Shown: positions 3,919-26,713 of the stretch, piece after piece
How the letters are laid out: each line of letters starts with the position of its first letter
Numbering within the stretch: the first letter of the stretch is position 1
Virus record (IMG/VR): IMGVR_UViG_3300032236_001850
Coordinates: 248,001 to 312,000 of that record
DNA length: 64,000 bases
Strand: one strand, 5' to 3'
Translations under genes and position numbers: made by a program
Notes under the pieces: model-generated
What the model was told of the DNA's origin: nothing
The model's database searches: none
The model's input: only the letters and a program-made list of their open reading frames with translations

Positions 3919-5100
3919 ATGGCTAAAACAAACACAACAAAATCTTCATCCGGTTTTTCCTTTCTCAGCATGGACAAGGAGCTATCAAAAATATCCGGAT
4001 TTGAAACTGGATCAATCCTAGCAACAAATACTTTTAGTGAGGTTGACGAATGGATTCCAACAGGAAACTACCTATTAAATGCACAAATTTCTGGATCCCT
4101 ATTCGGCGGTGTACCAAACACTAGATCTTTTGGTGTTATGGGAGATCCTGGTACTGGTAAATCTTTCTTCTGTTTAAATGTGGTTAGGGAAGCACAAAAA
4201 ATTGGCTATGATGTTATCTATTGTGATACTGAAGGAGCCATTGATAAATCAGGAGCTGTTAAATTTGGTATAGATGTAAATAAGATTAGATACCAACCTA
4301 TACAAACTGTATCACAATTCCAGACTTTCGTTGCTAATGTTCTTGACATTGTCAAGAAAGCAAAAGCAAATGGTGATAATCCAAAAATCCTTATAGTTCT
4401 TGACTCCCTTGGTATGTTAAGTACTGATAAAGAATTGGCTGATGCAATGAAAGGTCATAACGCAGCAGATATGGGTGCTAAGGCTAAGGAACTTAGAAAG
4501 TTATTCAGAGTAATCACATTGGATCTTACTGCTGCTAAAATTCCGTTGATCTGTACCAATCACGTTTATGCTGGCGGTGGATATGTACCAACAAAAGAAA
4601 GCTCAGGTGGTGATGGACCTATCTTCGCTATGTCTGTTGTTGCTTTTCTTTCTAAAGCTCAATTGAAAGATGGATCTGGTACCAAAACTGGTATCGTTTG
4701 TACCTCGACATTAAAGAAAAGCAGATTCACTATACCTGAACAGATTAAATTCCATATATCATTCTCCCATGGTATGAATCCATATGTTGGGTTACAGGAT
4801 TATGTTACTTGGGAAGCATGCGGAATAGAAAGAGGTAAATTCGAGGAAGTTAAAAATGCTGATGGAAAGAAGGAATTGGTATTTAAACCAAGCGCATCTT
4901 CGACAAGATGGGGTGTTAGACATCTTGGTAAAACTGTTGCTTCCACTGAATTGTTTACTGATAAGGTTTTCACTATGGAAGTTCTTCAGCAACTTGATGT
5001 TAATGTAATAAAAGATAAGTTTAAATTTCCGGATCTTGCAGATCATTCAGAATTGCTTGACTCTATAGAGGATGAGGATTTAGAAGATGGAGAAGAATAA
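3919..5100 (+). CDS. uvsX: UvsX/RecA-like recombinase
   Basis: IPTGNYLLNAQISGSLFGG, Walker A GDPGTGKS, YCDTEGAID, IVLDSLGML, NHVY, SGGDG. Confidence 0.93.
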   Translation: MAKTNTTKSSSGFSFLSMDKELSKISGFETGSILATNTFSEVDEWIPTGNYLLNAQISGSLFGGVPNTRSFGVMGDPGTGKSFFCLNVVREAQKIGYDVIYCDTEGAIDKSGAVKFGIDVNKIRYQPIQTVSQFQTFVANVLDIVKKAKANGDNPKILIVLDSLGMLSTDKELADAMKGHNAADMGAKAKELRKLFRVITLDLTAAKIPLICTNHVYAGGGYVPTKESSGGDGPIFAMSVVAFLSKAQLKDGSGTKTGIVCTSTLKKSRFTIPEQIKFHISFSHGMNPYVGLQDYVTWEACGIERGKFEEVKNADGKKELVFKPSASSTRWGVRHLGKTVASTELFTDKVFTMEVLQQLDVNVIKDKFKFPDLADHSELLDSIEDEDLEDGEE

Positions 5101-5386
5101 AATAAAATTCAAATATATCATGGGTCTTTGGAAAACTCTTCCAAATTACCCAACAAAAGAGGATATAGTCTATGAGATTAGTCTATATCTTCTTAAGGAT
5201 AAAAGACCCAATGGTGAATTTTCTCCACAAACTTTTAATTCGATATTTGGTTCTAAATGGGAAAGTGGATCTCATGGGCTTGTAATCAAAAAAATGATTG
5301 AAGATGGTGATTTTATAGAAACAAAAAAAAGCACCGCAAGTAAGATATGGTATAAGATAAACAATAACCCTTATTATAAAAATTAA
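5087..5386 (+). CDS. Hypothetical protein
   Basis: 99-aa ORF overlapping uvsX stop, in operon with helicase. Confidence 0.65.
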   Translation: MEKNKIKFKYIMGLWKTLPNYPTKEDIVYEISLYLLKDKRPNGEFSPQTFNSIFGSKWESGSHGLVIKKMIEDGDFIETKKSTASKIWYKINNNPYYKN

Positions 5387-5388
5387 AA

Positions 5389-6687: not shown

Positions 6688-6703
6688 AAATAACCATTAA
6701 AAA

Positions 6704-7192: not shown

Positions 7193-7193
7193 T

Positions 7194-8312
7194 ATGAATG
7201 AGCCTATAAAATTAGTAAACGATAAAGCAAAAAGAGTTTGGTTTATAACGGATACTCATTTAGGTGTAAGAAACAATTCGAATGAATGGATAGACCAAAC
7301 AAGGGAATATTTCTTTGATTGGTTTTTTCCATTAGTTAGAAAAAATTATCAGCCGGGTGATATTCTTATTCATCTCGGCGATTTTTTTGATTCCAGACAA
7401 AGTATAAATTTAAAAGTGCTTAATCTTGGAATATCCATCGCCGAGGAAATGTCTTCCATATTCGTAGATGGTGTTTACGTGATAATTGGAAATCATGATA
7501 TTTTCGGTAAAAATACAAATGATGTTAACTCCCTTAAATCTATAAAATGGATTCCTGGAATAAATGTTTTAGAGGATCCCGTTACTCTTGAATTACCAGA
7601 TAAGAATTTCTTTTTAATGCCATGGAGGAGGGATCATAATGCAGAGATGGAAACACTCGATCTCATTAATCCGCATGATGTTCTTTGTTGTCATGCTGAT
7701 ATAAGAGGCTTGAAATTTAATAAATATGTTAATGTTGAATCAGGAGCAGATGTAACAAAATTTAGAAAATTCACAAAGGTGTATTCTGGTCATATCCATT
7801 ATGCTCAGAAGCATGAGAATATAACCATGCTTGGATCACCTTATGAACTGACCAGATCAGACATGGACAATCAAAAATCAATAACAGTTTTAAACATCAA
7901 GGATATGGTGGAAACTGTTTATGTTAATGATTTCTCTCCAAGGTTCAGAAAATTTTATTTCAGCGATATTTTGGAATCAACTCCTGAGGAACTTGAAATT
8001 AATTTCAGAAACAATTTTGTTGATATTATGATTGATCCTGTTATGGCTCTTAAAGCTCCTCTTAGCATGCTCACTGATATGGTGACCTCTCAGAGATTCC
8101 TAAAATTCCATCCGTATGATCCTGAAAAATCTACAAGTTTAACTGACCAGATTGTTGATTCTGATGGTGACACACAATTTAACGTTTTAGATTTCATTAA
8201 GACTTATGTTGAATCAATGGACTCCGACGAGGAGACAAAGAAAAAAATAATTGCTAGTTTATTTAAACTGCATACCATAGTAATAAACCAGGAACAAGAA
8301 AAGAAATTATAA
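7194..8312 (+). CDS. gp47: Recombination nuclease subunit, Mre11/SbcD-like (T4 gp47)
   Basis: Metallophosphoesterase motifs DTHLG, HLGDFFD, GNHD, GHIH, GSPY. Confidence 0.92.
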   Translation: MNEPIKLVNDKAKRVWFITDTHLGVRNNSNEWIDQTREYFFDWFFPLVRKNYQPGDILIHLGDFFDSRQSINLKVLNLGISIAEEMSSIFVDGVYVIIGNHDIFGKNTNDVNSLKSIKWIPGINVLEDPVTLELPDKNFFLMPWRRDHNAEMETLDLINPHDVLCCHADIRGLKFNKYVNVESGADVTKFRKFTKVYSGHIHYAQKHENITMLGSPYELTRSDMDNQKSITVLNIKDMVETVYVNDFSPRFRKFYFSDILESTPEELEINFRNNFVDIMIDPVMALKAPLSMLTDMVTSQRFLKFHPYDPEKSTSLTDQIVDSDGDTQFNVLDFIKTYVESMDSDEETKKKIIASLFKLHTIVINQEQEKKL

Positions 8313-9976
8313 TGAAAATACTGAAGATTGAATGGAGAAATTTCTCCTCTTATGGTAATAGATTACAAACTTTAGAATTTCCTAACGAGGCTTGTCTTTT
8401 TCAAATTGTTGGTGAAAATGGAGCAGGAAAAACTACAATATCTCAGGTAATAGCATTTGCTCTTTATGGAAAGGTAGAGGGTAAGAAACTTGGTGATATT
8501 CCTAATAGAATAAATGGACATGCATGGGTTAGGATAGAATTTGAAAATAATGGTAAAATAATATCAGTGGAGAGAGGTCTGGAGCCTTCTGTTTTCTCCC
8601 TTTCTATAAATGGTATACCCTATGATCAAGCAGGAAATAGTAATGTTCAATCTTATCTTGCCGACGATTTAATAGGTATTCCTTATTATGTTTTTAATAA
8701 TACAATATCCCTCTCAATAAATGATTTTAAATCTTTTGTGAAGATGTCACCTCAGGATAAAAGAGCCATTATAGATAAAATATTCGGGTTCAATATACTT
8801 AACCAAATGAGAGAATTATTAAAAGGAGAGATTAAAAAAATAAAGGAATCTTTGGACATTCTTTCAGGTAGCTTGGCTACTACTGAGTCAACCATTAATA
8901 AATCGACCGAGGAAATGGAATTATTAATAGAACAGATGGATGAGGATATAAAGAATGAAATGAGTTTGCTTTCTGAATCATTGGAGAAATTTCAGAATTT
9001 ACAAAAGCTTCATGCTGGTAAGATTACAGATTTCAAAGCAGAGGAATCAAAATTGGGTGATCTTATATACACATCAACAAAGGAACTTATAGAGATCAGA
9101 GGAAATATAGATACGTTAACAAATGGTCTAAAGTTATATGAGTCTGACATGTGTCCCACGTGCGAGAGCTCGCTCGAGGGGGAATTTCACAATCATAAGA
9201 AATCAATCATGGAATCTGATTTGGATTCATCAAAAAATAAATTGGATGAAGCTGAAGGTGTGATGGTTAAGCTAAGAGAGAAAGAATCAGAAATGATAAA
9301 AACCAAATCTGATCTTAGCGATAAAAATAATAAGATCCAGCAAAAAATAAGCGAAATCCTTAGAGATATAAAACTATTGAATGATAGAAAAAATGATGCA
9401 CAGGTAAAATCTCTAGAAAAAATTATAAAAAATCTGGAGGGCGAAAGAGATAGAATAAAAGAGGATGTTTTTAAATCTGCTGAAAAAAATGCTTGGATAA
9501 AAACTTTAGATGACATCTTAAGCGAGAAGGGTGTTAAGCAAATGGCTATAAAAACAATACTTCCCTCATTAAATTCCGAAATAATGGATCTACTAGAGGC
9601 TCTCCATCTGGATTATCAGGTTATTTTTGACGAAGAATTCAAAGCTTCCATTTATCAGATGGGTATAGAAATACCTGTCCAGACTCTAAGTACTGGTGAG
9701 ATGAAAAAGGTTGATTTCGTGGTTCTTATCGCCATAATGAAACTGATGAAATTAAAATTTAGTTCGATAAATCTTTTGTTTCTTGATGAATTATTCAGTT
9801 CTGTAGATCCTGATGGTGTAACATCAATACTTAGAATTCTACAAAAAAATTCTAGAGAGATGGGTCTTAATATATTCGTTATAAATCATGCTCCGATGCC
9901 ACATGAAATATTCGATTGGAAAATAGATATTAAAAAGACAAATAGTTTTTCTTCTATGACGATAGATCAATTTTAA
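8312..9976 (+). CDS. gp46: Recombination ATPase, Rad50/SbcC-like (T4 gp46)
   Basis: GENGAGKTT, coiled coil with zinc hook CPTC, LSTGE signature, LFLDE. Confidence 0.93.
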   Translation: MKILKIEWRNFSSYGNRLQTLEFPNEACLFQIVGENGAGKTTISQVIAFALYGKVEGKKLGDIPNRINGHAWVRIEFENNGKIISVERGLEPSVFSLSINGIPYDQAGNSNVQSYLADDLIGIPYYVFNNTISLSINDFKSFVKMSPQDKRAIIDKIFGFNILNQMRELLKGEIKKIKESLDILSGSLATTESTINKSTEEMELLIEQMDEDIKNEMSLLSESLEKFQNLQKLHAGKITDFKAEESKLGDLIYTSTKELIEIRGNIDTLTNGLKLYESDMCPTCESSLEGEFHNHKKSIMESDLDSSKNKLDEAEGVMVKLREKESEMIKTKSDLSDKNNKIQQKISEILRDIKLLNDRKNDAQVKSLEKIIKNLEGERDRIKEDVFKSAEKNAWIKTLDDILSEKGVKQMAIKTILPSLNSEIMDLLEALHLDYQVIFDEEFKASIYQMGIEIPVQTLSTGEMKKVDFVVLIAIMKLMKLKFSSINLLFLDELFSSVDPDGVTSILRILQKNSREMGLNIFVINHAPMPHEIFDWKIDIKKTNSFSSMTIDQF

Positions 9977-10014: not shown

Positions 10015-11244
10015 TTGAGACCTAGACAATCAATAAGAGTAAATCCGGATCCCAAGGAGCTAAGTCCTAAACAGGAGAATGCACAAATAAAAAGCAATAA
10101 GGATCAAATTCCTGAGCTTATTAATGTTCCTGTTACTAGTTTTGAAATTCCTCCTTCCAACACCCAACAAAATATGCTTATAAAAAGCACAAAAAATAAG
10201 GTTGATGGAACTCAGGCTATTTCTATAGAGGACTTAAATGTTTTACCTTCTGAGACAAAACAGATGGGTATATTTGGTGTTGGTCTTCTTGCCCCTAGAA
10301 CAAATATACCTAATGAATATCTAACAAATGTTGTTTCACCAAGAAATATACCTGTTGTTTCTAAAGTTACTACGAGCACTTATTTTTTTATAATTTATGA
10401 TAATCCAAATATAGCTAGAGTTACAATAGAAAGCACAGTTAAATCTTTTGCTGTTATAGAAACCCTAAATCCGTGTACAGTTAGAGATTGTTCGGAGATG
10501 CTTAGATTGCATTATACAAACATAACTGCCATATCGGAATCTGATTATCTTACTGGGTTCTTTGAGCATCCAACTTATTGTAATGATTCTGGGTATCCCT
10601 TACAGATAAGGTATGCAGAAATTCCTATTATTAAACAGAAAACTCCGGGAAGATTGGATAATATTCCTTTAGGATATCCTAATTTTGATAGCACACCCGA
10701 TGGTGTCATAACAAGACAAGGTCCTGTTCCAACCCCTCCTTATACTAATTTTTCTTATTCTGGTAGTCCCAATGAATACATATCATATCCAGGTGCTACT
10801 AGTTCAGGATCTACAATCTATGTTTCGAGTACAATTGGATTAACTGCTGGTATGTACTTAACTATAACAACCCAAGGTGTAGGGACGCTTAGTCCAAATA
10901 CTAAGGTCATTAGTGTTTTGGATATTGGAAGATTTACAGTTAGTCCATCACCGCTTGTTCAACTTAGTGGAAAAAATAACGTTGTTACTGGGATCCTTCC
11001 TGCAAAAATAATACCGGGGGGAACGGTTCAATTTTCAGATACTAGTGTTAGAAACCCTTGGCAATTTGCTCCAACCGGATGGAAATGGACTTTTGGCCCT
11101 AGTGCTTCACCTACTGGTAGTACTGGAAGAAATCCACTTGTTACGTACGGAGCAACTGGTATCTATAGTGTTACGCTGACTGCATCTAATCAATCTGGTG
11201 CTACAACAAAAACAAAAACAAATTTTATAATAGTAACAAATTAA
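10015..11244 (+). CDS. Virion structural protein with C-terminal PKD (Ig-like) domain
   Basis: VQFSDTS...WKWTFG...NPLVTYGATGIYSVTLTASN is a typical PKD signature; TTG start uncertain. Confidence 0.7.
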   Translation: MRPRQSIRVNPDPKELSPKQENAQIKSNKDQIPELINVPVTSFEIPPSNTQQNMLIKSTKNKVDGTQAISIEDLNVLPSETKQMGIFGVGLLAPRTNIPNEYLTNVVSPRNIPVVSKVTTSTYFFIIYDNPNIARVTIESTVKSFAVIETLNPCTVRDCSEMLRLHYTNITAISESDYLTGFFEHPTYCNDSGYPLQIRYAEIPIIKQKTPGRLDNIPLGYPNFDSTPDGVITRQGPVPTPPYTNFSYSGSPNEYISYPGATSSGSTIYVSSTIGLTAGMYLTITTQGVGTLSPNTKVISVLDIGRFTVSPSPLVQLSGKNNVVTGILPAKIIPGGTVQFSDTSVRNPWQFAPTGWKWTFGPSASPTGSTGRNPLVTYGATGIYSVTLTASNQSGATTKTKTNFIIVTN

Positions 11245-16005: not shown

Positions 16006-17832
16006 ATGGGTGAATTAATACAAAAGAAACAAGAACAGATAGAAACCTCTCTGTGGAACACCGAGAGAGTAAATGAGCTTCTTAGAAGAATAGATGAGGA
16101 GGGATTGGACTACAAAGATGTGGATAATCCTTTTTATGAACAAGATCCGGAATTAAAAAAACCTAGTCTTCAGTGGGAATATACTAGGGAGGAGGTTTTT
16201 GAGATGAAGAAGTGTGCAGAAGACGTCTCATATTTTGCAAAATATTGCAAAGTTATGACGGACGTTGGATTGGAATATATTCATCTTAGAGATTATCAGG
16301 AATCTGTTCTTAGAGAATATCAATCAAATAGATTCAACATATTTTTAGCTCCAAGACAGGTTGGTAAATCTATAACGTCTTCTATAATATTAGTTTGGTA
16401 TCTCCTTTTTAACCATGATAAAAATGCGATGATCCTTGCTAACGTCGGTGACACTGCGGAGGAGTTAATGGATAAGATAAAATCCATAATCAAAGGGCTT
16501 CCATTTTTTCTTAAACCTGGAATGATTATTAATAATGTGATGTCAATGCGTTTCGATAACGGATGTAGGGTATTAGCTAAAACAACCACGAAAACATCTG
16601 GTATTGGTTTTACCATTCACTTTCTATACATGGACGAGTTTGCACACATTAATGAAAACTTCATGGAAGCTTTCTTCAGATCAACCTATCCAACTGTATC
16701 TTCTTCCAAGGTTTCACGTATTATAATTACGTCAACCCCAAACGGGATGAATAAATTCTATGAGCTTTACCAGGGTGCATTAGATGGTGACAACAGTTTC
16801 AATCCGATAAGGGTTGACTGGTGGCAAGTACCTGGTAGAGATGAAGCTTGGAAACAAAGAGAAATTGGTAACCTTGGTAGTGAGGAGTTGTTCAACCAGG
16901 AGTATGGTAACCAGTTTTTAAGTTCATCCAGTTTATTATTAGGATCGGACGAACTAAAAAGAATCAAGAAAAACGAGACTGAATATGAATGGAAGGAAAT
17001 AAGTGAACTGCATAATAATAATATAAATTATGAAAACTTCAGATGGCATCCTAAATTCGATATTGATAAGTGTGATGAACCAGGCAAAAAGTTCGTTCTG
17101 TCTATAGATCTTAGTGGTGGTGGAAAGGGAGATTTTACAGTTATTAATATATTTAAAGTTACACCTCTTCCCAAAGTTATTATAGAAAAGATGACCGAAT
17201 ATGAGGATGAATCTGATTTCTTTGGATTGATTCAGGTTGGTGTGTTCAGAGACAATGAGATAAAACTAGAGGATGTTGTTAAGCTTCTTCAGATATTGTG
17301 CGAGAATGTATTCACTGTGGATAGGGTTAAAATAGCCCTTGAGATGAATTTTAAAGGTGAGCTTCTTTATGATAAATTAATATCTAGAGATGAATTTTTC
17401 GATGAAATGTTTCTTTTTACTAAACACACGGAGAGCGCAAGAACTCTAAAACCAGGCATAAAATACAACGAAAAAAACAAAATGAAATATTGTGAGTTGT
17501 TAAGAAGCTTGATAAGGGAAAACAGAATACTGGTAAATGAAAAGAAATGGACAATTCCTGAATTATTTACTTTTGGTTTAAATAACAGAGGAACTTATTC
17601 CAGTCAGAGTGGACATGATGACGTTGCGATGACTCTAGTTAATCTTCCTGGTTTATTGGATGGATACGATTTCAATCACATGGTCGGTGAGGTGTTTGAT
17701 GAAATGGTGGACAGTCCCTATAGGGATATAATAATTAGAAAACTTGAAGGTGATCAGATTTTTGATGAGGATAGGAAGGGACCTTCGACCAAGGAAGGTA
17801 AATCATATAGTGACTTCAATAACTTAATGTAG
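16006..17832 (+). CDS. gp17: Terminase large subunit (T4 gp17-like)
   Basis: LRDYQ, PRQVGKS, YMDEFAH, STPNGMNKFY, SIDLSGGGKGDF, HDDVAM. Confidence 0.96.
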   Translation: MGELIQKKQEQIETSLWNTERVNELLRRIDEEGLDYKDVDNPFYEQDPELKKPSLQWEYTREEVFEMKKCAEDVSYFAKYCKVMTDVGLEYIHLRDYQESVLREYQSNRFNIFLAPRQVGKSITSSIILVWYLLFNHDKNAMILANVGDTAEELMDKIKSIIKGLPFFLKPGMIINNVMSMRFDNGCRVLAKTTTKTSGIGFTIHFLYMDEFAHINENFMEAFFRSTYPTVSSSKVSRIIITSTPNGMNKFYELYQGALDGDNSFNPIRVDWWQVPGRDEAWKQREIGNLGSEELFNQEYGNQFLSSSSLLLGSDELKRIKKNETEYEWKEISELHNNNINYENFRWHPKFDIDKCDEPGKKFVLSIDLSGGGKGDFTVINIFKVTPLPKVIIEKMTEYEDESDFFGLIQVGVFRDNEIKLEDVVKLLQILCENVFTVDRVKIALEMNFKGELLYDKLISRDEFFDEMFLFTKHTESARTLKPGIKYNEKNKMKYCELLRSLIRENRILVNEKKWTIPELFTFGLNNRGTYSSQSGHDDVAMTLVNLPGLLDGYDFNHMVGEVFDEMVDSPYRDIIIRKLEGDQIFDEDRKGPSTKEGKSYSDFNNLM

Positions 17833-17894: not shown

Positions 17895-20800
17895 ATGGCA
17901 AATAAGGTAAAAATAGACTATTCTCAATTTAGAGCATCTGGTGTCTATACGCTTGAATTTGACGCATCACAAAACGTCATACTTACATCACAAACAATAA
18001 GACTGGTTATAGGTTTCTCAAATAAGGGACCTTTCAATACTCCTGTCTATATTCCTGATGCAACAACGATGATATCAATCTTTGGTGACATTGACGCGTC
18101 TCTTGAAAATAAAGGATCTTTCTTCCATAGATCAATATTAACCTGTTTAAATGCTGGACCAGTTTTCGCATTGAATCTTTTAAAATTGAACGATAATTTG
18201 GAAACTTCTGATCCTGATATGGTTACGTATAGATCTTTTTCGGTTGATACTGAGGAATACAATGGCGAAGTTACTAGTGAATTATACTCTTCCTATTACA
18301 ATAAGGAGAGATTCTGGTTTGCAGATCCTAATTATTTCTTAGCAACTTTAAGTTTTGCAGATCAGGGTAAATTACTAAGTTTAACTAATCTTGGTAAATC
18401 ACCTATGAGTTTAATAATCAGAAAATCTACTGATTCAACTACACCTCTACTTGGATATAATATATTTGCCATTGATTGGTATGGTGCTAACAATGTACCT
18501 ACATTTATGCACCCATATGATTATATAAGTGATTATTTTATAGATGTAATAGCAGTTTATGGTAATTGGACAAATTACCAAGCATTGTCTGTAGATCCAT
18601 ATTGGGGAGCTACTGGCCTTCAAATGTTTACTAATAATGGATTTGTAAAGAACAAAATAGATCAATTCCTTGCTAATCCAAATGTTTCAATAGTTACTTC
18701 TGTTACTGGATGTATCATCCCAGATTTTGTTGATCTTAATGGTGTTAATAAATACATTCAAACCCTTATAAATAACAATACAGCATCAACAGGTTTATTC
18801 TGTGCAATAGATGAACAAGCCTTTGATGATCTTTGTAACAATCCATATAGAATTGATCTTGTTGGAAATCACTTAATAGATGAACTTAGCGGTGATAGGG
18901 ATCTTCCAAATCCAAGAATAAATTTCTTAAGTTACGATCAGGCATTAGAGGCTGATTACCTATACACACAAAATGTAGTTGGTATAACCGGTGCTACTGG
19001 ATTTGTTAGTCCTGTTGGGGTTACCGGTTTTACAAAAGGTGCTAAGGTTGGTACTCTATTTACTATAGGTGGAGGAACAGGAGCTACTGCTGGTGTTTAT
19101 CAGGGATCCTTTGTTACTTATGATCCAAATGCATATGATACAGGTATGCATTATCTTTTAACTAAAAGTATTACTGGTACAACCGGAGGTATTTTACAAA
19201 ATGCTGCTCAGAAAGCTGCTCTTAAATCTTTCCTTAGCGTAACCTCATCCGATGACGAAAAATTCATTCTTGGAGTTGTACAGGGTGTAGCTGGTTTAAC
19301 CGGAGCTCTTATAAGTCAATTCAACGAAGCTGATATAGTAAAACTTAAAGTTACTGGAACTAAGGATGTTAGTGGGGAATTACTTATTTGGTGGACTCAT
19401 CCTCTAGATACTGCACAATACAGATCTCAAGGAGTTACTGTTAAACCTACATATAACTTATCAACATACAACACTGGTGCTTCTGGAAGTAATAAACCAT
19501 ATTATCCTAATTCCTATCAGTTTGGTAATTCTGATTATTTTGATATAATAAGTTTAGCAACACCAACTGGAGCTACTGGACCTGGTGCTCCTACTGGTTA
19601 TACAAATTCTGTTGTTGCTTATAATGCATCAACATTCTTTCAGAATCACAAATATAAGGAGATAGTTGATGGAGATTCTATTTGGATCACACCAACGGGT
19701 ACACCGTACGAACAATATCTTGGATTCCAGAATACTGTTGATAGAGATCAATTTGATCTTACATATGCTAGAGCATATTCACAACAAGGTACTCTTGATT
19801 CTAGTACGATAGTAAATATTGCAGATTTCGGTACATCTTATGCTTCTAATAATATAGGTCTTCCCGTAAGTGCACAAAAGCTTGATATAATTTCTCAAAT
19901 AGGTTCAATCAATCAATTTATAGATTGTACTAAATTAGATGTTAGTAAATTTACAATAAACACTGTTAATAACGTTTCACCTTTATCTGTGGGAGATTGG
20001 GTAGTTTCTACGGATCTTGATATATGTGTGCCAGCTAATGGTAATAGACAAAGTAGACTTACTAAAGTTAAATCTGTTGCACAAACAGGAACTCCTGGTT
20101 TATTGAAAGTTGAAACTACGAGACCAGTTTTATATTATTCTGGCGTTGGTGGTGCTCTTAGAGTACAAAAATTCAAATCAATACCACAGTTTACAACATC
20201 TTTTGATTTTACATTCCTTAAAGGATTTACAATGAAGGAAAGACATAGACCTAATGGAACTGACGCAAGATTAAATGAGATACTTAACGTTTTATATGAT
20301 ACAAATATTGCTAAGACACTTGCTTCTAAGGATGTAATCTCATTCAGATATATCGTGGATACTTTTAGTGGTATTATAGGACCAGAATCTAAATCACAAT
20401 ATAGTAGACTTGCAAAAATGAGACAGCAAGCTTTGGCTATTATAAATGCGCCATCTATGGCACAATTTAGAGCTAGTACTGATCCTAGATTTACTGATGC
20501 AGCTACTGCTTCTAATCCTTATCCTCCACTAAATACAGCTTATATTGCTGATGGTGGTAATCTTTCATTGAATCCATCATACACATTTAGTTTACCGACT
20601 GAGGAAGATGGATCTAAATTCTGTGCATTCTATTCTCCTTATATAGTTATAAGAAATGGTAATAAGAATCTTAGTGTTCCACCAGCTGCTTACGTTTCTA
20701 ACAATTTCATTAGAAAATTTGCAAACGGTGAACCATATGCTATCGTTGCTGGTCAGAAAAGAGGTATCATAAGCGGTGGTAATATAGTTGGTGTTGAATA

Positions 20801-21263
20801 TGACTTTACTAATGAGGATAGAGGAAATCTTGAACCTTTTGGTATCAATCCAATTATTAAAAGAAAAGGCATCGGTGTGGTTATATACGGTAACCAAACA
20901 GCTTATCAGCAAGTAAACTCAGCATTCAACCTAGTTCATGTTAGAGATTTGTTGATCAGTATTGAGAATGACGTTCAGGAGATATTAGCAAACTATCTTT
21001 TTGATTTCAATGAAGATTCAATAAGATTGGAGATTAAGACATTAGTTGATAACTATCTTGATGGAGTTAGATCAGGTGGTGGTATTTATGCTTACCAAAC
21101 GATAATGGACTCGTCAAATAACACTCCAGCTATTATAGACATGAATATGGGTATAATAGACATCATAATCGAACCTGCTAGAGGTATTCATAAATTCATC
21201 AATAGAATTACAGTTACCAGAACAGGTGGAATAGCTGCTGGAGGATTTATACAGTTCGTATAA
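17895..21263 (+). CDS. gp18: Contractile tail sheath protein (T4 gp18-like) with large insertion
   Basis: SGVYTLEFD, GFSNKGPFNTP, INPII, GNQT, NVRDL-like HVRDLL, FDFNE..IR, IEPARG. Confidence 0.92.
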   Translation: MANKVKIDYSQFRASGVYTLEFDASQNVILTSQTIRLVIGFSNKGPFNTPVYIPDATTMISIFGDIDASLENKGSFFHRSILTCLNAGPVFALNLLKLNDNLETSDPDMVTYRSFSVDTEEYNGEVTSELYSSYYNKERFWFADPNYFLATLSFADQGKLLSLTNLGKSPMSLIIRKSTDSTTPLLGYNIFAIDWYGANNVPTFMHPYDYISDYFIDVIAVYGNWTNYQALSVDPYWGATGLQMFTNNGFVKNKIDQFLANPNVSIVTSVTGCIIPDFVDLNGVNKYIQTLINNNTASTGLFCAIDEQAFDDLCNNPYRIDLVGNHLIDELSGDRDLPNPRINFLSYDQALEADYLYTQNVVGITGATGFVSPVGVTGFTKGAKVGTLFTIGGGTGATAGVYQGSFVTYDPNAYDTGMHYLLTKSITGTTGGILQNAAQKAALKSFLSVTSSDDEKFILGVVQGVAGLTGALISQFNEADIVKLKVTGTKDVSGELLIWWTHPLDTAQYRSQGVTVKPTYNLSTYNTGASGSNKPYYPNSYQFGNSDYFDIISLATPTGATGPGAPTGYTNSVVAYNASTFFQNHKYKEIVDGDSIWITPTGTPYEQYLGFQNTVDRDQFDLTYARAYSQQGTLDSSTIVNIADFGTSYASNNIGLPVSAQKLDIISQIGSINQFIDCTKLDVSKFTINTVNNVSPLSVGDWVVSTDLDICVPANGNRQSRLTKVKSVAQTGTPGLLKVETTRPVLYYSGVGGALRVQKFKSIPQFTTSFDFTFLKGFTMKERHRPNGTDARLNEILNVLYDTNIAKTLASKDVISFRYIVDTFSGIIGPESKSQYSRLAKMRQQALAIINAPSMAQFRASTDPRFTDAATASNPYPPLNTAYIADGGNLSLNPSYTFSLPTEEDGSKFCAFYSPYIVIRNGNKNLSVPPAAYVSNNFIRKFANGEPYAIVAGQKRGIISGGNIVGVEYDFTNEDRGNLEPFGINPIIKRKGIGVVIYGNQTAYQQVNSAFNLVHVRDLLISIENDVQEILANYLFDFNEDSIRLEIKTLVDNYLDGVRSGGGIYAYQTIMDSSNNTPAIIDMNMGIIDIIIEPARGIHKFINRITVTRTGGIAAGGFIQFV

Positions 21264-21303: not shown

Positions 21304-21858
21304 ATGGCAGGACTATCACATTATCAAAACTCACTATCAGCAATAAACAAGTATGAACCTGTTTATCTGAACCAATTTGAAGTAACAATAATACCTCCAG
21401 CTGCTGTGGCAGGGGGTAGTATTTTGTTACAGCACGTTAGCAAAGTTAATGGACTTTCGTTAGATAAAAATCCAGGAACAGTTCAACAAAAATATAAATT
21501 TGCTAAAAGGAATTATGCGGGATCAAAGCCTGAAAATACCTTTATGGATCTTAGTATCACTTTCAGTGTCAACCTTAATGATGCGAATTCAATGTACGTT
21601 TTTAAAACATTAAGACAGTGGTCTGATTTGATCTATAATCCATTAACTGGAGCAATGGGTCTAAAAAACGATTACACAGGAAGTATAATCATCTCTGTTT
21701 TTAATAAAGCTGGTGACGTTTATAGAAGAATAACATGTAAAGATACGTTTCCGACTAAACCTATCTCGCCAATGAACTTGAACTATACAAGTACTGATCT
21801 ATATAAAATAGATGATATGGTGTTTGCGGTTGATTATTGGGACGATCTATTCCTATAA
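21304..21858 (+). CDS. gp19: Tail tube protein, copy 1 (T4 gp19-like)
   Basis: Follows sheath; EPVYLNQFEV...WSDLIYNP.TG.MG...DY...FP pattern. Confidence 0.85.
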   Translation: MAGLSHYQNSLSAINKYEPVYLNQFEVTIIPPAAVAGGSILLQHVSKVNGLSLDKNPGTVQQKYKFAKRNYAGSKPENTFMDLSITFSVNLNDANSMYVFKTLRQWSDLIYNPLTGAMGLKNDYTGSIIISVFNKAGDVYRRITCKDTFPTKPISPMNLNYTSTDLYKIDDMVFAVDYWDDLFL

Positions 21859-21872
21859 AATAAAAAACATAA

Positions 21873-22448
21873 ATGGCTGGATTACCACATTTTACAAATT
21901 CTCTTGCAGGTATAAATAATTTTGAGCCTGTATACCTTAATCAGTTTGAGGTACTGATAAGCCCACCTGCTGCTATTGTTTCAGCAAGTACGACTTTCCA
22001 TGGTGAGAGTATATTAACTCAACAGGCTAAATCCATAACTGGATTAGCTGTTGATATTGCTCCAGCACAAACGGTAAACCAAAACTATAAGTTTGCAACT
22101 AGAAGATATGCTGGGGGTGAACCTCAAACGAGTGATATGAATTTAACCATTGAATTCGAGGTTAACCTTAACAAGTCAAATTCTATGGAACTTTATAAAA
22201 TTCTTAGACAATGGTCTGATTTGATCTATAATCCATTAACTGGAGCAATGGGTCTAAAAAACGATTATGTTGGTTCCATACTTATCTCAATATTCAACAA
22301 ACAAGGGGACGTTTTCAGAAGAATAAGAATTCCTTCGTGTTTTATAAGTGAACCTATAAACGCTATGGATCTTGATTACGAAACTCCTGCTATCTATACT
22401 ATAAGAACTTCGTGGGTCTGTGATTATTGGGAAGATCTATTCCTATAA
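21873..22448 (+). CDS. gp19: Tail tube protein, copy 2 (paralogue)
   Basis: Same motifs as copy 1; 56-bp identical tract shared. Confidence 0.85.
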   Translation: MAGLPHFTNSLAGINNFEPVYLNQFEVLISPPAAIVSASTTFHGESILTQQAKSITGLAVDIAPAQTVNQNYKFATRRYAGGEPQTSDMNLTIEFEVNLNKSNSMELYKILRQWSDLIYNPLTGAMGLKNDYVGSILISIFNKQGDVFRRIRIPSCFISEPINAMDLDYETPAIYTIRTSWVCDYWEDLFL

Positions 22449-22466
22449 GAAATAAAATTTTAGAAG

Positions 22467-22492
22467 AAGGTCAAATTTTGACCTTTTTTTTT
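22467..22492 (+). terminator. Intrinsic terminator
   Basis: AAGGTCAA-att-TTGACCTT plus T-run. Confidence 0.75.
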
Positions 22493-22525
22493 GTGGTATG
22501 TTATATAGAATAAAATTAATTTTTT

Positions 22526-23638
22526 ATGAATAATATGGACATATCACCGGAAGAGATATTAAAAAGAAGAGAGGAACTGAGCGGAATCGTTTACGATGAT
22601 CCGGTAGAAGACGAAGAAGTTCCAGTAATAAATCAACCAGTATTAAATCAGGAACCAGAAATTGTAAAAACACAAGATCAACCAATTTTCAAACAACCTG
22701 AGGTATTATCAACTCTTGGTAATATAAATGACGGTAAACCGGAACCTGAACCAATTACATCATTTGGTAAAGCTCAATCTTACGCCGATTCACCATCATT
22801 CGATATCGGATGGAAGAATCTTCCTGTGGATCTGTTACCTTCTGGTGGACTATTTTATCCAAGTGGAACAAAAATAGCTATTAGAGCTGCTGAGGTTAAA
22901 GAGATAAGACACTTCTCTGCTATTGACGAGGACGATAGACTTGATATAGAGGAAAAACTTGGTTATATTATTGAAAGATGTCTCAGAATGGATTTTCCTG
23001 GTGAAGGTGTGGTTTCTTTTAAAGATCTTGTTCAGGAAGATAGATTTTTTGCAATTATGGCTATAAGGGATTTAACCTTTATAAATGGTGAAAATTCAAT
23101 TATACTCATGCCTAAAATAAAATGTGATGATAATGCTGAATGTCCATTTTCTAGAGGTATTGAATTAAGAACGGGAGCATTGAGATCCTATGATTTGGAT
23201 CCTCAGATAACAAAATATTATAATCCATCCAGTAGAAGTTTTACATTCGATGTTAAAAAAATAGGAAAAACAATAGAGATGACTGTACCTACTATAGGTA
23301 TAAATAGAGCTATTAGTGATTTTATAGTTTATTGTTCTGCAAGAAGTATAGATATAGATGAGGGATTTTTAAAAATAGCACCTTTCATTCTTAAAGAATG
23401 GAGAGGACTAACAAATGAAAAGATTCTAATGAGAATGAGAGAGGCTGATTATTGGTCCAAAGAGGAATATAGTTTATATTTTGGGCTTTCTGAGAAAATA
23501 AAGATCGGCACAGAGATTGACGTAAAACAAGTTTGTCCGGTTTGTGGTAAGGAGGTCACTGCGGACATTGCCTTTCCCTCAGGGCTCAGATCTCTTTTCG
23601 TTATTTCAGATATCTTTGGAGAATTACTTGGAAATTAA
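22526..23638 (+). CDS. Baseplate hub / tail assembly chaperone (T4 gp26-like)
   Basis: LLPSGGLFYP...IRAAEVKE, C-terminal CPVCG and FPSGLRSLF; lies between tube and tape-measure genes. Confidence 0.6.
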   Translation: MNNMDISPEEILKRREELSGIVYDDPVEDEEVPVINQPVLNQEPEIVKTQDQPIFKQPEVLSTLGNINDGKPEPEPITSFGKAQSYADSPSFDIGWKNLPVDLLPSGGLFYPSGTKIAIRAAEVKEIRHFSAIDEDDRLDIEEKLGYIIERCLRMDFPGEGVVSFKDLVQEDRFFAIMAIRDLTFINGENSIILMPKIKCDDNAECPFSRGIELRTGALRSYDLDPQITKYYNPSSRSFTFDVKKIGKTIEMTVPTIGINRAISDFIVYCSARSIDIDEGFLKIAPFILKEWRGLTNEKILMRMREADYWSKEEYSLYFGLSEKIKIGTEIDVKQVCPVCGKEVTADIAFPSGLRSLFVISDIFGELLGN

Positions 23639-23831: not shown

Positions 23832-25406
23832 ATGGCTACAGACCAAAAACTTGTTGCTCAATTATTAGATCTTAGCAGAAATGTAGAGAAACTTTCTGGT
23901 GAGATAAAAAAGAATACAAGTGTAAATAAGGACCTAGTAAAATCCGATGCAGCAGAAACAAAATCTCCTGTTGAATCTAAGGATGCAGCAAAGATAGCGG
24001 AAGGATTAAAATCTCTTGATTTTAAGGGTCTTAAGGATGAATTTAAAGGACTTAAAGATGGATTAAAGGGTATAGATAAGCTTGACTTTAAAGGCCTTGA
24101 AAATGGTCTTAAAAGTCTTGATTTCAAAGGCCTTGAAAAAGGATTGAAAGGTTTAGATTTTAAAGGTCTTGAAGCTGGTTTAAAAGGATTTGATGTAAAG
24201 AGTATTACAGAATCATTTAAGGGCATCAGTGATCTCAAAAATATTGATATTGGTGGGATTACTAAAAACCTTGCTTCTGGCGGAGGAGTTAAGGATCTCA
24301 TATCTGGATCGATTGGTAATCTAGGAAAGGGACTTCTTGGCGGATTTGCAAGCGGAGGTGTTGTTAAAAATCCTGGTGCTTATTTAGTGGGAGAAAAAGG
24401 TCCAGAGATTGCTAATCTTCCAAAGGATGCCACTGTAATACCCAATGATAAAACTGAGGCCATTTTATCCGGAAATCCATCGTCAATAAATGCTAAGCTT
24501 AAAGCAAAGAATGGTACACAATATCCATCCAAGGAAGAAATAGAAGCAAAGAAAAGTGAACTTTTAAAAAGTGATCCAATTTTCTATTCTGATCCTACTG
24601 AACTCAATGATGAACTTGAGTATTACATTAATAATTATAAAGCAGTTAAACAATTAGATGCTTACAACAAAGGAGGTTTAGAACAGCTTGGTAAAAGTAC
24701 AGCTAAACCAGCAACAGAACAAACATCTGAGGTTAAAAAAACTGCAGATGAGTTAACAAAAGTTAATCCAATTCAAAATAAAAAAGAAACCAAGGCTGAG
24801 TCAGTCGAGAAAAAACCTGGACTTTTTTCCAAAATATTTTCCAAAGAAAATATTAAAAATATTGGGGGTAAGATTGAAGCAGGTGCAGCTGGTTTATTAG
24901 GTGGTGGATTAAAAGATAAGCTAACTGGTACATTGAAGGGATCTGCAGAATCATTGATTAATAAGGAAAGTTTAGGAATACCAGATTTTGCTAAAAGCTC
25001 GTTAGCATCGGGTCTTTCATTTCTCAATAAAGAACCAAAAAAACAGTCTGCTGATCTTGGTATTGCTGTGCCTGATATCAAACAGAATTTACCGTCTCTT
25101 TCTAATCTACCGATAGTAAAACCTAAAAATGAGCCTGTACAAAAAAATGAGCCACAAGCACCTGTTGCTAAAGCCGCGCCAGTAAATGATGCTCAGACAA
25201 ATCCGGTCGCAAGCGCTCCCGCGGGAGAAACAGAGTCTCCAGGTAGCAATATTACGGAAACGAAATCACAGGCAGAGTCACCAATAACAAAAAAAGATAT
25301 AGATACAATAATTTCCTTACTTTCCAGAATGGGATCTCTATTGGAAGGACCACTGAGCGTGGCATCTCTAGATTCTCCTTTTAGACCAGATTCCAGAAGA
25401 ATTTAA
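23832..25406 (+). CDS. Tape-measure-like tail protein
   Basis: 11-aa repeats GLK(S/G)LDFKGLE; GFASGGVV...LVGEKGPE motif common in tape-measure proteins; position after the chaperones. Confidence 0.6.
   Translation: MATDQKLVAQLLDLSRNVEKLSGEIKKNTSVNKDLVKSDAAETKSPVESKDAAKIAEGLKSLDFKGLKDEFKGLKDGLKGIDKLDFKGLENGLKSLDFKGLEKGLKGLDFKGLEAGLKGFDVKSITESFKGISDLKNIDIGGITKNLASGGGVKDLISGSIGNLGKGLLGGFASGGVVKNPGAYLVGEKGPEIANLPKDATVIPNDKTEAILSGNPSSINAKLKAKNGTQYPSKEEIEAKKSELLKSDPIFYSDPTELNDELEYYINNYKAVKQLDAYNKGGLEQLGKSTAKPATEQTSEVKKTADELTKVNPIQNKKETKAESVEKKPGLFSKIFSKENIKNIGGKIEAGAAGLLGGGLKDKLTGTLKGSAESLINKESLGIPDFAKSSLASGLSFLNKEPKKQSADLGIAVPDIKQNLPSLSNLPIVKPKNEPVQKNEPQAPVAKAAPVNDAQTNPVASAPAGETESPGSNITETKSQAESPITKKDIDTIISLLSRMGSLLEGPLSVASLDSPFRPDSRRI
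24002..24195 (+). repeat. Coding 33-bp (11-aa) amphipathic repeats
   Basis: GLKSLDFKGLK / LDFKGLEN / GLKSLDFKGLEK / GLKGLDFKGLEA. Confidence 0.8.
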
Positions 25407-25466: not shown

Positions 25467-25488
25467 TAGGTAATAAAAATTGTTCCCT

Positions 25489-26043
25489 ATGAAATTTGAA
25501 ATCTACCGAGATACCTCATTTATAACTGAGGATTTTCTCAAAAAACCTACCTGGAAAATTAAGAAAAATAAACTTGAGAATTATTTCGAGGTTTATTTTT
25601 CTGAATCAATAAATTCTAAGCTTGACTCAGAACCTAGAGAACACCAGAAGGACTCGATATACATGGAGATGTCCCAGGTGTGGGCTAAAAATTCTAAATG
25701 TAAGAGAATGCAGGTTGGATCCTTGATAGTTAAGGATAAATCTATCATATCCGATGGATATAATGGTTCACCCAGTGGATTCCCTAATATCTGTGAGGTT
25801 GATGATGTTACCCTACCTTATGTGCTTCATGCTGAAGCTAACGCAATAACAAAATTAGCCAGAGGAACTCAAAGTTCCGATGGCTCGACATTATATGTAA
25901 CCTTATCTCCCTGTTACGAATGTTCAAAACTCATAATACAATCAGGAATCAAGAGGGTTGTATTTTCAGAAATTTATAGAAAGCCAGAATCAATATCTTT
26001 TCTTGCTGAAGCCGGAATAGAGATTTTAAGAAAACCCAAATAA
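25489..26043 (+). CDS. dCMP deaminase (ATG 25489 preferred over TTG 25480)
   Basis: CKRMQVG, GYNGSPSG, HAEANAI, PCYECSKLIIQSGI. Confidence 0.92.
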   Translation: MKFEIYRDTSFITEDFLKKPTWKIKKNKLENYFEVYFSESINSKLDSEPREHQKDSIYMEMSQVWAKNSKCKRMQVGSLIVKDKSIISDGYNGSPSGFPNICEVDDVTLPYVLHAEANAITKLARGTQSSDGSTLYVTLSPCYECSKLIIQSGIKRVVFSEIYRKPESISFLAEAGIEILRKPK

Positions 26044-26044
26044 T

Positions 26045-26713
26045 ATGCAAGGAAAAGAAAAAAATATACAAAAATTAGCAAGTGAATTTATAAAACATAG
26101 AAATGACAGATCCTTTAGAAATCTATTTGAAAGATTAAAACCTGGTATATTAAATCATTGTTTTTTAATAGTAAAAGATCCTTCTCTTGCGGAGGATGCT
26201 TTTTTGAACACCATGTCAAAGATCTGGCAAAAGATAGATCAATATAATGACGAGAGAGGTAATTTTTCAACCTGGTGTTACAACATAGCAAGGAATGAAA
26301 CTTTACTTCTAATGAAGGAGGAAAAGAAGTATAATGCAAGAACAAGTCTGGAGATGGAATTTTTCTCTTCTAATAATGAAGTAGGTGATATTGGTGGAAC
26401 CTACAGCATGGAGGAGGATCAGACAAATTCTTTTTTCAACGAAACAAGTAAATTTGATGAAATATATGGTTCTGTTATAGATGAAATAGAAGGACTTCCG
26501 GATCTTTATAAGAATATTATGATTGATAGGGAGATCAATAATATGAAATATAAAGATATAGCTGAAAAATATGATTTAAAGAAAAGATCAGTAGCAACAA
26601 GAATTAGAAGGGCTAGAAGCAAAATTACAAAGAATGTTGGTACGGAAGCTGTTGAAATTATAACAGGTAAAAGCAGAAACGTTACGAGAAATTCAACATC
26701 AAAGAAACTTTAA
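26045..26713 (+). CDS. ECF-type sigma70 factor
   Basis: Region 2 AEDAF...IWQKIDQY...FSTWCYNIARN; region 4 LPD...KYKDIAEKYDL...VATRIRRAR. Confidence 0.88.
   Translation: MQGKEKNIQKLASEFIKHRNDRSFRNLFERLKPGILNHCFLIVKDPSLAEDAFLNTMSKIWQKIDQYNDERGNFSTWCYNIARNETLLLMKEEKKYNARTSLEMEFFSSNNEVGDIGGTYSMEEDQTNSFFNETSKFDEIYGSVIDEIEGLPDLYKNIMIDREINNMKYKDIAEKYDLKKRSVATRIRRARSKITKNVGTEAVEIITGKSRNVTRNSTSKKL

What the first reader, a model, noticed from the sequence alone, without database searches (positions are those of the whole stretch)
21304..22448. Two tail-tube paralogues sharing a 56-bp identical tract: gene-conversion footprint
Seen: 21619-21674 equals 22212-22267 (TGGTCTGATTTGATCTATAATCCATTAACTGGAGCAATGGGTCTAAAAAACGATTA), including all synonymous positions. 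The 3' ends also nearly match (GATTATTGGGA[C/A]GATCTATTCCTATAA), while the flanking protein sequence differs considerably. Inference: recent or recurrent conversion keeps the WSDLIYNPLTGAMGLKNDY interface identical in both subunits, as expected if they co-assemble in one tube.
Basis: partly seen in the sequence, partly recalled or inferred. Interest (0 to 1): 0.65.

Follow-up and report, generated by a model that had tools for sequence, protein, structure and literature searches.

The report
Gene conversion between tail-tube paralogues
Two neighbouring tail-tube genes of a 434-kb freshwater megaphage share a real 56-base identical stretch because the first gene has repeatedly overwritten a short patch of the second; this is a clean but ordinary case of gene conversion, and it is not what keeps the protein motif the same.

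Summary
Window 21619-21674 equals 22212-22267 (56 nt) inside two tandem tube-fold genes, T1 (184 aa) and T2 (191 aa). They are 60% identical in protein, and their synonymous sites are saturated everywhere else (pS 0.69 outside the tract, 0.09 inside). Chance is excluded: P is about 1e-6 from codon usage, and the longest run in 2,756 cross-genome T1xT2 comparisons is 42 nt. Mis-assembly is excluded by a second assembly with the same sequence and by a separate 56-nt k=31 unitig at twice the flanking depth. Comparison with 53 distinct related genomes and several close strains shows short-patch ectopic gene conversion. It is recurrent, with at least three to five independent events, and every event I could polarise runs T1 to T2. 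A relative (L003/L004) has its own 56-nt identical tract with the same borders but six different synonymous bases. A sister strain about 2% away still keeps T2-type bases at the 3' end of the tract. The peptide WSDLIYNPLTGAMGLKNDY is conserved in both paralogues in nearly all relatives even though their codons differ at 5-18 of 57 sites. Purifying selection therefore keeps the motif, not conversion, and in the window the conversion changes no amino acid. The phage encodes RecA/UvsX-, Mre11- and Rad50-like proteins. The duplication is specific to this clade. The role of T2 and co-assembly of the two proteins remain untested.

The parts
21304..21858 (+). T1, tail-tube paralogue 1 (184 aa). It is the conservative copy and the donor in every conversion event I could polarise.
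   Evidence: phrog_32623 E 6e-38 and phrog_3629 'tail tube protein' E 4e-9. AF2 model pLDDT 70; Foldseek best hits are Afp1, Pvc1, T4 gp19 and KP1 tube, E 1e-5 to 1e-4. It is closer than T2 to the single-copy tubes of PAU, LR756500 and Lak-A1. dN/dS against L004 is about 0.02.
21873..22448 (+). T2, tail-tube paralogue 2 (191 aa). It is the faster-evolving tandem duplicate and the recipient of the conversions.
   Evidence: phrog_32623 E 2e-30. AF2 model pLDDT 70 with the same fold; a 7-aa insert forms a short helix at residues 36-42. Its stem branch in the tree is longer, 0.53 against 0.25. dN/dS is about 0.026.
21619..21674 (+). Copy 1 of the 56-nt identical tract, in T1 (residues 106-124: end of the long helix plus the following loop).
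22212..22267 (+). Copy 2 of the 56-nt identical tract, in T2. This is the converted patch. Its last three codons before GAT TA (CTA AAA AAC) are T1-type; sister strain L088 still has T2-type CTT AAG AAT there.
21831..21858 (+). 3' end of T1 (DYWDDLFL and stop), which nearly matches the 3' end of T2 at 22421-22448.
   Evidence: One difference in 27 nt. 2.1% of cross-genome pairs are as alike, so conversion is not demonstrated here.
17895..21263 (+). Tail sheath gene (1122 aa), immediately upstream.
   Evidence: phrog_34521 E 4e-118; Pfam Phage_sheath_1C at 24.4 bits, just under the cut-off.
22526..23638 (+). Downstream tail gene of unknown role (370 aa).
   Evidence: phrog_36717 E 6e-26; weak match to baseplate hub phrog_150.
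23832..25406 (+). Tape-measure-like protein (524 aa).
   Evidence: Weak PHROG tape-measure matches, E 4e-7.
3919..5100 (+). The phage's own RecA/UvsX-like recombinase, the likely engine of the conversion (inferred).
   Evidence: Pfam RecA E 1e-13, 51.8 bits, above the cut-off.
7194..9976 (+). Mre11-like nuclease (7194-8312) and Rad50-like ATPase (8312-9976), a pair of the T4 gp47/gp46 type.
   Evidence: Metallophos E 2e-10; AAA_23 and SMC_N. The assignment as a gp46/47-type pair is from my own knowledge of T4.

Best explanation
T1 and T2 are tandem paralogues of the contractile-tail tube protein. They arose by one duplication at the base of this megaphage clade, and both are kept under strong purifying selection.

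Their most conserved segment is the end of the single long helix plus the following loop, WSDLIYNPLTGAMGLKNDY. Because of that constraint it is also the stretch where the two DNA sequences are most alike, about 79% against 72% or less elsewhere. During the phage's recombination-dependent replication (inferred) this stretch repeatedly serves as a short homology patch for ectopic gene conversion. A piece of about 60 nt or less of T1 is copied into T2.

In the window's lineage a first event made about 45-50 nt identical. A second, very recent event, after the split from a strain about 2% away, extended the identity to 56 nt. Because the peptide was already the same in both genes, these events change only synonymous sites. 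They are most likely neutral by-products of recombination, not a device that maintains the motif.

Shown: the identity, its significance, that it really is present in two copies, the recurrence, the T1-to-T2 polarity, and the conservation of the peptide without conversion. Inferred: the recombination mechanism, the neutrality, and the roles of T1 (major tube) and T2 (specialised ring or co-polymer).
For: **The tract**
- 56-nt exact identity; pS 0.09 inside and 0.69 outside; P about 1.4e-6.
- The cross-genome null has a maximum run of 42 nt. Within-genome runs are 56 (window), 56 (L003/L004) and 41 (L056 group).

**Recurrence**
- The L004 tract has the same borders but differs from the window's at 6 synonymous sites, while T1 equals T2 within each genome. 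Between the two genomes the tract diverges at the background rate: dS 0.85 against 0.59-0.70 in the flanks.
- Across genomes, the distance between a genome's own T1 and T2 is lower than the cross-genome distance only in and just upstream of the tract (ratio 0.85; 10.9 against 12.6 differences; 0 of 5,000 permutations as low). This holds after removing the three obvious lineages. There is no effect in the N-terminal or middle regions.

**Polarity, T1 to T2**
- ATC and GAC are T1-type in close relatives.
- Window T2 carries T1-type CTA AAA AAC where sister strain L088 keeps T2-type CTT AAG AAT. These are three clustered changes (cluster P 0.045).
- L056 T2 carries the AGT serine codon that is T1-type in its relatives L054 and L044.
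- L090 T2 carries T1-type CTG..GAC, unlike L091/L092, which are 1-2% away in these genes (9-10 differences per gene).

**It is real in the DNA**
- Identical sequence in a second assembly, and a 56-nt unitig at twice the flanking depth.

**History of the genes**
- With the tract masked, T1 and T2 each form one group and together are sister to single-copy outgroups (96/95 support).
- All 74 loci of the clade that reach far enough carry both genes. In the sister clade, 80 of 80 loci carry one.

**Machinery**
- RecA/UvsX-, Mre11- and Rad50-like genes lie in the window.
Against: - The exact sharing of both tract borders between the window and L004 fits inherited, continuing homogenisation better than independent accidents. 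Some selective or mechanistic constraint on the tract is therefore not excluded.
- The permutation test ignores the relatedness of the genomes.
- Five polarised events all in one direction is only suggestive (two-sided binomial p 0.06). A few single sites (CAA and TTA in L088 T1, CTT in L056 T1) could be read as T2-to-T1 transfer.
- In unconverted genomes the longest perfect T1/T2 match in the tract is only about 14-20 nt. That is short for RecA-type exchange, so template switching at a replication fork is an equally good mechanism.
- No raw reads were available, only contigs. Rare intermediates or T1/T2 deletion hybrids could not be sought.
Confidence: 0.85

Rival explanations
1. Selection-driven concerted evolution. 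The two proteins touch through this segment, and conversion is favoured because it keeps the two surfaces matched.
For: - At one variable position of the motif (K-x-DY) the two paralogues of a genome agree slightly more often than paralogues of different genomes: 0.28 against 0.19. Examples are L041 V/V, L046 T/T and L079 R/R.
- The tract borders are shared by the window and L004.
- T1 and T2 pair prediction: weak support, ipSAE 0.42 against a best control of 0.00.
Against: - The peptide is the same or nearly the same in both paralogues in almost all 53 genomes without nucleotide identity.
- All conversion events seen in the window's own group are synonymous.
- The motif is also conserved in single-copy tubes (Lak-A1) and resembles a stretch of T4 gp54.
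- No interface was returned by the pair prediction.
Confidence: 0.1
2. Assembly artefact: a de Bruijn-graph collapse or chimera wrote the T1 tract into T2. 56 equals k+1 for k=55.
For: Only the numerical coincidence with a common k-mer size.
Against: - A scaffold from another ENA accession has identical T1 and T2 (L087).
- Logan's k=31 contigs of run X1 give a separate 56-nt unitig at depth 55.6, against 27-34 in the flanks, and contigs that break at the tract edges. That is what a true two-copy repeat gives.
- Two further assemblies (L003, L004) show the same structure with other bases.
- Both borders coincide with real substitutions in T1 (CAG, TAC).
Confidence: 0.02
3. Chance identity from codon bias in an AT-rich genome acting on a conserved peptide.
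For: Codon bias is strong (33% GC), and the peptide is conserved in both genes.
Against: - P is 1.4e-6 from codon usage.
- None of 2,756 cross-genome pairs reaches 56 nt; the maximum is 42.
- None of 104 cross comparisons involving the window has 1 or fewer differences in the tract; the minimum is 5.
Confidence: 0.01
4. A nucleotide-level functional element (an RNA structure, a regulatory site or a recombination site) is present in both genes and is selected as DNA or RNA.
For: The tract has sharp borders, and they are conserved in two lineages.
Against: - Between genomes the tract changes at synonymous sites as fast as the flanks: dS 0.85 against 0.6-0.7.
- Most relatives lack the identity.
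- No joint, meaning a deletion between the two repeats, was seen in the contigs of four runs. Contigs cannot show rare forms, however.
Confidence: 0.02

Closest known systems
Ectopic (interlocus) gene conversion between tandem paralogues, that is concerted evolution as described in bacteria and eukaryotes, for example tandem paralogue clusters (PMC2568036) and beta-globin duplicates (PMC6209878)
   Same: A short tract with near-zero synonymous divergence inside otherwise saturated paralogues. Within the tract the paralogues group by genome; outside it they group by orthology. It happens repeatedly in one place.
   Different: Here it occurs in an uncultured virus, in a tail structural gene pair, with very short patches (about 60 nt or less). 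It is silent at the protein level, and every event I could polarise runs the same way.
Recombination at conserved motifs in T-even phage tail-fibre genes (the 'His boxes' of Tetart and colleagues, recalled from memory, not checked here)
   Same: A conserved peptide motif supplies the short nucleotide homology at which phage recombination acts.
   Different: That case swaps adhesin segments between phages and changes host range. This one copies a patch between two genes of one genome and changes no residue.
Tube and tube-like paralogues in contractile systems: T4 gp19 with gp48/gp54, Afp1 with Afp5/Afp7, phiKZ gp30 with the initiator gp88 (PMC13250141), A-1(L) gp10 with gp18 (PMC10966104)
   Same: A major tube protein plus a second protein of the same fold that forms a compatible ring. 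T1 and T2 both have that fold.
   Different: T1 and T2 are adjacent, almost equal in length and 60% identical. T2 has no extra domain of the kind A-1(L) gp18 has. Whether T2 is an initiator, a terminal ring or a co-polymer is unknown.
Single-copy tube genes of related large phages (Sphingomonas phage PAU gp92, Lak phages, LR756500, Tenacibaculum PTm1)
   Same: 30-44% identical to T1, same length class, and next to or near the sheath gene in PAU.
   Different: They have one copy. The duplication is limited to the window's clade.

Membership tests
Contractile-tail tube protein (T4 gp19 / Afp1 / Hcp fold) | Tube fold: a beta-sandwich with one flanking helix and a long hairpin | tested here: met
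   T1 model (pLDDT 70): Foldseek matches Afp1 (6rap/6rao), Pvc1 (6j0b), T4 gp19 (5w5f) and the KP1 tube at E 1e-5 to 1e-4, probability 1.00, TM 0.42-0.55. The T2 model has the same order of secondary-structure elements.
Contractile-tail tube protein (T4 gp19 / Afp1 / Hcp fold) | Sequence match to a curated tube family above its threshold (Pfam PF06841 Phage_T4_gp19 or PF23849 Phage_TTP_2) | tested here: not met
   No Pfam hit for T1 or T2 even at E 10. Orthologues P0005 and P0120 reach only 13-14 bits for PF06841, whose cut-off is 28.2. PF23849 was not found in the window's own genome at E 0.01, although some orthologues carry a precomputed hit. PHROG tail-tube family phrog_3629 does match (E 4e-9 and 7e-7).
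Contractile-tail tube protein (T4 gp19 / Afp1 / Hcp fold) | Gene context: directly after the sheath gene, within a tail module | tested here: met
   Order is terminase, sheath (17895-21263), T1, T2, tail gene, tape-measure-like gene.
Contractile-tail tube protein (T4 gp19 / Afp1 / Hcp fold) | Present in the virion as stacked hexamers inside the sheath | not testable with these tools
   Uncultured phage; no proteome or structure exists.
Ectopic gene conversion / concerted evolution | A tract whose synonymous divergence between the paralogues is far below that of the flanks | tested here: met
   pS 0.086 against 0.685. The sliding window dips only at alignment codon columns 105-125.
Ectopic gene conversion / concerted evolution | Paralogues group by genome inside the tract and by orthology outside it | tested here: met
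   The window and L004 tracts differ at 6 sites, yet T1 equals T2 within each genome. With the tract masked, T1 and T2 each form one group.
Ectopic gene conversion / concerted evolution | Donor and recipient can be told apart with outgroups | tested here: met
   T1-type bases are found in T2 of the window, L004, L056 and L090, while their nearest relatives keep T2-type bases.
Ectopic gene conversion / concerted evolution | Not explained by assembly or by chance | tested here: met
   The peptide is identical or nearly so in both paralogues in almost all 53 genomes, with 5-18 nucleotide differences in 57 nt.
   The tract is the end of helix 98-110 plus loop 111-125; the loop has lower confidence, with the pLDDT block for residues 111-120 at about 60. 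The pair prediction gave weak support and reported no contacts.
Tube initiator or adaptor ring (a possible role of T2) | One ring per tail at the baseplate or neck, often with an added domain | not testable with these tools
   T2 has only a 7-aa insert and no added domain. Its copy number per tail is unknown.

The most novel reading that the evidence does not exclude
The tract is more than a neutral scar. T1 and T2 may build a two-component tube, as mixed or alternating rings. The strictly T1-to-T2, border-respecting homogenisation would then be a maintained feature, for example keeping a shared helix-loop contact and its codons matched. Alternatively the 56-bp direct repeats could allow occasional T1/T2 hybrid genes. 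Either would make this the first phage tail tube known to be built from two co-evolving subunits.
Probability: 0.1. Interest if true: 0.65.

Novelty: new member of a known kind. Interest (0 to 1): 0.38.

Why it matters
This is a well-resolved natural example of intragenomic gene conversion in an uncultured megaphage. Related strains from separate metagenomes let the events be dated against one another, from the split with a strain about 2% away back to lineages at dS about 0.6, and polarised from T1 to T2. It shows that very short conserved motifs are enough for the recombination system of large phages to homogenise paralogues. It also warns against reading identical tracts as evidence of selection on an interface.

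It identifies a tube-gene duplication specific to this clade and conserved in all 74 complete loci. Its function, a second tube component, is an open structural question for these phages. The practical value is modest, because the mechanism itself is textbook.

Tried and rejected
- **De Bruijn artefact (56 = 55+1).** Rejected by the second assembly and by the unitig at twice the flanking depth.
- **3'-end near-match as a second conversion patch.** Not significant: 2.1% of cross-genome pairs are as alike. I note that T2 ends in Leu in the window, L088 and L004 but in Met in the other close relatives, which could be a small non-silent transfer. This is unproven.
- **Pfam scans of T1 and T2.** Nothing found, even at E 10. 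A sequence search of PDB gave only weak gp54 and gp19 matches, E 0.3-1.2.
- **RecT and ERF annealing proteins.** None in the genome.
- **Pair prediction of T1 with T2.** Weak support only. The median ipSAE is 0.42 against a best control of 0.00, with the runs at 0.01, 0.42 and 0.47. The runs agree in at least 0% of contacts, and the partner's pLDDT is at least 74. In the tool's calibration the mark was reached by 58 of 80 solved complexes and 2 of 110 mismatched pairs, but scores of 0.60 or under came from only 7 of those 80 and from both mismatches. My own alignments were used, so these counts hold only roughly. Tube complexes are solved, so the score may also reflect memory of them. No contacts were returned, so the tract could not be mapped onto an interface.
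- **Deletion hybrids between the two repeats.** No joints in the contigs of four runs, but contigs cannot show rare forms.
- **Raw reads.** None were on offer; every run was served as contigs.
- **Diversity-generating retroelement.** Considered and dropped. The two copies are identical rather than differing at adenines, and the tract encodes the least variable part of the protein.
- **The big representative-protein search.** Not used, because the word search and the locus scans sufficed.

Full report
**What is there**

The window is bases 248001-312000 of an IMG/VR virus record of 434,509 bp with direct terminal repeats. It is 33% GC, and nearly all long ORFs are on the + strand.

Around the finding the gene order is:
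- large terminase, 16006-17832
- a 1122-aa tail sheath, 17895-21263
- T1, 21304-21858, 184 aa
- T2, 21873-22448, 191 aa
- a 370-aa tail gene
- a tape-measure-like gene

T1 and T2 match PHROG 32623 strongly and the tail-tube PHROG 3629 more weakly. They match no Pfam family. AlphaFold models of both have mean pLDDT 70. They show the tube fold, and Foldseek puts T1 next to Afp1, Pvc1, T4 gp19 and other myophage tubes at E 1e-5 to 1e-4. "Two tail-tube paralogues" is therefore right at the level of fold and context. Membership of the curated Pfam tube families fails by score.

**The observation**

Window 21619-21674 and 22212-22267 are identical for exactly 56 nt.

The proteins are 60% identical and the genes 65% identical. 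Outside the tract, amino acids shared by the two genes use the same codon 49% of the time, against 47% expected from codon usage. pS is 0.685 there (dS about 1.8), so silent sites are saturated. Inside the tract pS is 0.086.

Given the peptide and the window's codon usage, 18 identical codons have probability 1.4e-6. As an empirical null I compared T1 of each of 53 distinct related genomes with T2 of every other genome. The longest exact in-register run has median 14 nt, 99.9th percentile 33 and maximum 42.

The second observation, the near-identical 3' ends, is real but unremarkable. One difference in 27 nt is matched or beaten by 2.1% of cross-genome pairs.

**Not an assembly artefact**

A 434,721-bp ENA scaffold from another accession carries identical T1 and T2 (L087).

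Only Logan contigs, not raw reads, were on offer. They are built with k=31 and so are informative here. In run X1, possibly the source sample, the contigs end 30 nt into each copy. The tract appears as its own 56-nt unitig with depth 55.6, while the flanks have 27-34. That is the signature of a true two-copy repeat. No joints were seen.

**History of the two genes**

The search for related loci returned 80 loci whose T1 is 70-98% identical to the window's. All 74 loci that reach far enough carry T1 and T2 in tandem, with clear orthology.

Single-copy tubes are found in Sphingomonas phage PAU (gp92), in Lak-A1, in the 462-kb phage LR756500, and in all 80 IMG/VR loci of the LR756500-like sister clade.

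In a protein tree with the tract masked, T1 and T2 each form one group (81/81 and 100/97). Together they are sister to the single-copy outgroups (96/95). The stem of T2 is twice as long as that of T1.

I read this as one duplication at the base of this clade. T1 is the conservative copy, being closer to every outgroup, and T2 is the derived one. Both are under strong purifying selection, with dN/dS about 0.02-0.03 against L004.

**What the relatives say about the tract**

The peptide WSDLIYNPLTGAMGLKNDY is the same or nearly the same in both paralogues throughout the clade. Yet in most genomes the two coding sequences differ at 5-18 of 57 positions. The motif also survives in the Lak-A1 tube, and a similar stretch aligns in T4 gp54. 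The peptide is therefore kept by selection on an old structural element, not by homogenisation.

Against that background three lineages stand out.

1. **The window.**
2. **L003/L004.** These are two assemblies from other metagenomes. They also have a 56-nt identical tract with exactly the same borders. It differs from the window's tract at six synonymous sites (CCA/CCT, TTA/CTA, GCA/GCG, CTA/CTT, AAC/AAT, GAT/GAC). Between these two genomes the tract has diverged as fast as the flanks (dS 0.85 against 0.59-0.70), while staying identical within each genome. This needs at least two conversion events, or continuing homogenisation.
3. **The L056 group.** It has a 41-nt identical run that includes an AGT serine codon. 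That codon is T1-type in its relatives L054 and L044, whose T2 has TCA.

Finer sampling adds more. L088 and L089, about 2% from the window and its sister in the tree (98/90), differ between T1 and T2 at four tract sites. Their T2 keeps T2-type CTT AAG AAT where the window's T2 has T1-type CTA AAA AAC. These are three adjacent third-position changes among 13 in the gene (cluster P 0.045). The same three differences appear in contigs of three runs from other studies. L090 differs from L091 and L092, which are 1-2% away in these genes (9-10 differences per gene), by T1-type CTG and GAC in its T2.

Across all genomes, the tract distance between a genome's own T1 and T2 is lower than the cross-genome distance (10.9 against 12.6; 0 of 5,000 permutations as low). 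This still holds without the three obvious lineages. The N-terminal and middle regions show no such effect. That test ignores the relatedness of the genomes and should be read as supportive only.

Every event I could polarise runs from T1 to T2. With five events this is suggestive, not established.

**Mechanism**

From the cross-genome comparison, the tract is the segment where T1 and T2 are most alike in DNA: about 21% differences against 28% or more elsewhere. The window itself encodes a RecA/UvsX-like recombinase (3919-5100), a DnaB-like helicase, and an Mre11-like/Rad50-like pair (7194-9976). No RecT or ERF gene is present.

I infer that short heteroduplex patches, or template switches during recombination-dependent replication, copy T1 into T2. 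The patches are bounded by the sharp drop in homology on both sides, where T1 reads T-G-S and T2 reads V-G-S after the tract.

Both borders in the window and in L004 coincide with derived T1 substitutions (CAA to CAG, TAT to TAC) that were not transferred. That fits edge sites being less easily included once the patch is established.

Because the peptide was already shared, the events are silent and most simply neutral.

**Where the tract sits in the protein**

In the T1 model the tract covers the C-terminal turns of the only long helix (98-110) and the following loop (111-125). The loop is modelled with lower confidence. The low-confidence N-terminal arm and the hairpin at 54-75 are the parts that usually mediate ring contacts in tubes. 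That last statement is from general knowledge of the fold, not tested here.

I could not map the tract onto a ring. The T1-T2 pair prediction gave weak support and no contacts; its scores and calibration counts are under Tried and rejected. The claims that the tract is "the interface" and that the two proteins share one ring remain open.

Solved myophage tails offer a precedent for a second tube-fold protein forming a compatible ring: the initiator gp88 of phiKZ (PMC13250141) and gp18 of A-1(L) (PMC10966104). T2, however, lacks any extra domain and sits beside T1.

**Verdict**

The gene-conversion reading is right and, notably, the conversion is recurrent. The functional gloss, conversion as keeper of a shared interface, is not supported.

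The phenomenon is a known kind of event in a new and nicely resolved setting. The lineage-specific second tube gene is the more interesting open question.

Noticed in passing
window 3919-9976: A T4-style recombination and replication cluster: a RecA/UvsX-like protein (3919-5100), a DnaB-like helicase (5389-6687), an Mre11-like phosphoesterase (7194-8312) and a Rad50/SMC-like ATPase (8312-9976).
   Followed up: partly
window 25480-26713: A dCMP deaminase (25480-26043) and a sigma-70-family factor (26045-26713) lie directly after the tail module. This fits a large phage with its own nucleotide metabolism and transcription control.
   Followed up: no
window 12710-15202: An 830-aa protein with weak matches to the T4 neck protein family and to head-closure PHROGs. 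It is much longer than usual for that role.
   Followed up: no
window 22443-22448 and the T2 3' ends in L005-L010 and L090-L098: T2 ends in Leu (CTA, CTG or TTA) in the window, L088 and L004, but in Met (ATG) in the other close relatives. T1 always ends in Leu (CTA). This may be a small non-silent transfer from T1, or independent point changes.
   Followed up: partly
L033 T1 against L045 T2 (loci): This pair gives the longest cross-genome T1xT2 exact run, 42 nt. It suggests older conversion events whose products have since been inherited or exchanged between lineages.
   Followed up: no
L085:5001-5579 (Prevotella phage Lak-A1): The single tube gene of Lak-A1 has one in-frame stop codon under table 11. 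This fits the stop-codon recoding reported for Lak phages (from memory). I did not check which stop codon it is, and no alternative code was applied.
   Followed up: no
window 10015-11244: A 409-aa protein with a C-terminal PKD domain lies between the recombination genes and the head/neck genes. It may be a virion decoration or adhesion protein.
   Followed up: no
window 22449-22525: The gap after T2 holds GGTCAAATTTTGACC followed by a run of T. This looks like an intrinsic terminator closing the sheath-tube operon. It was seen by eye and not scanned.
   Followed up: no
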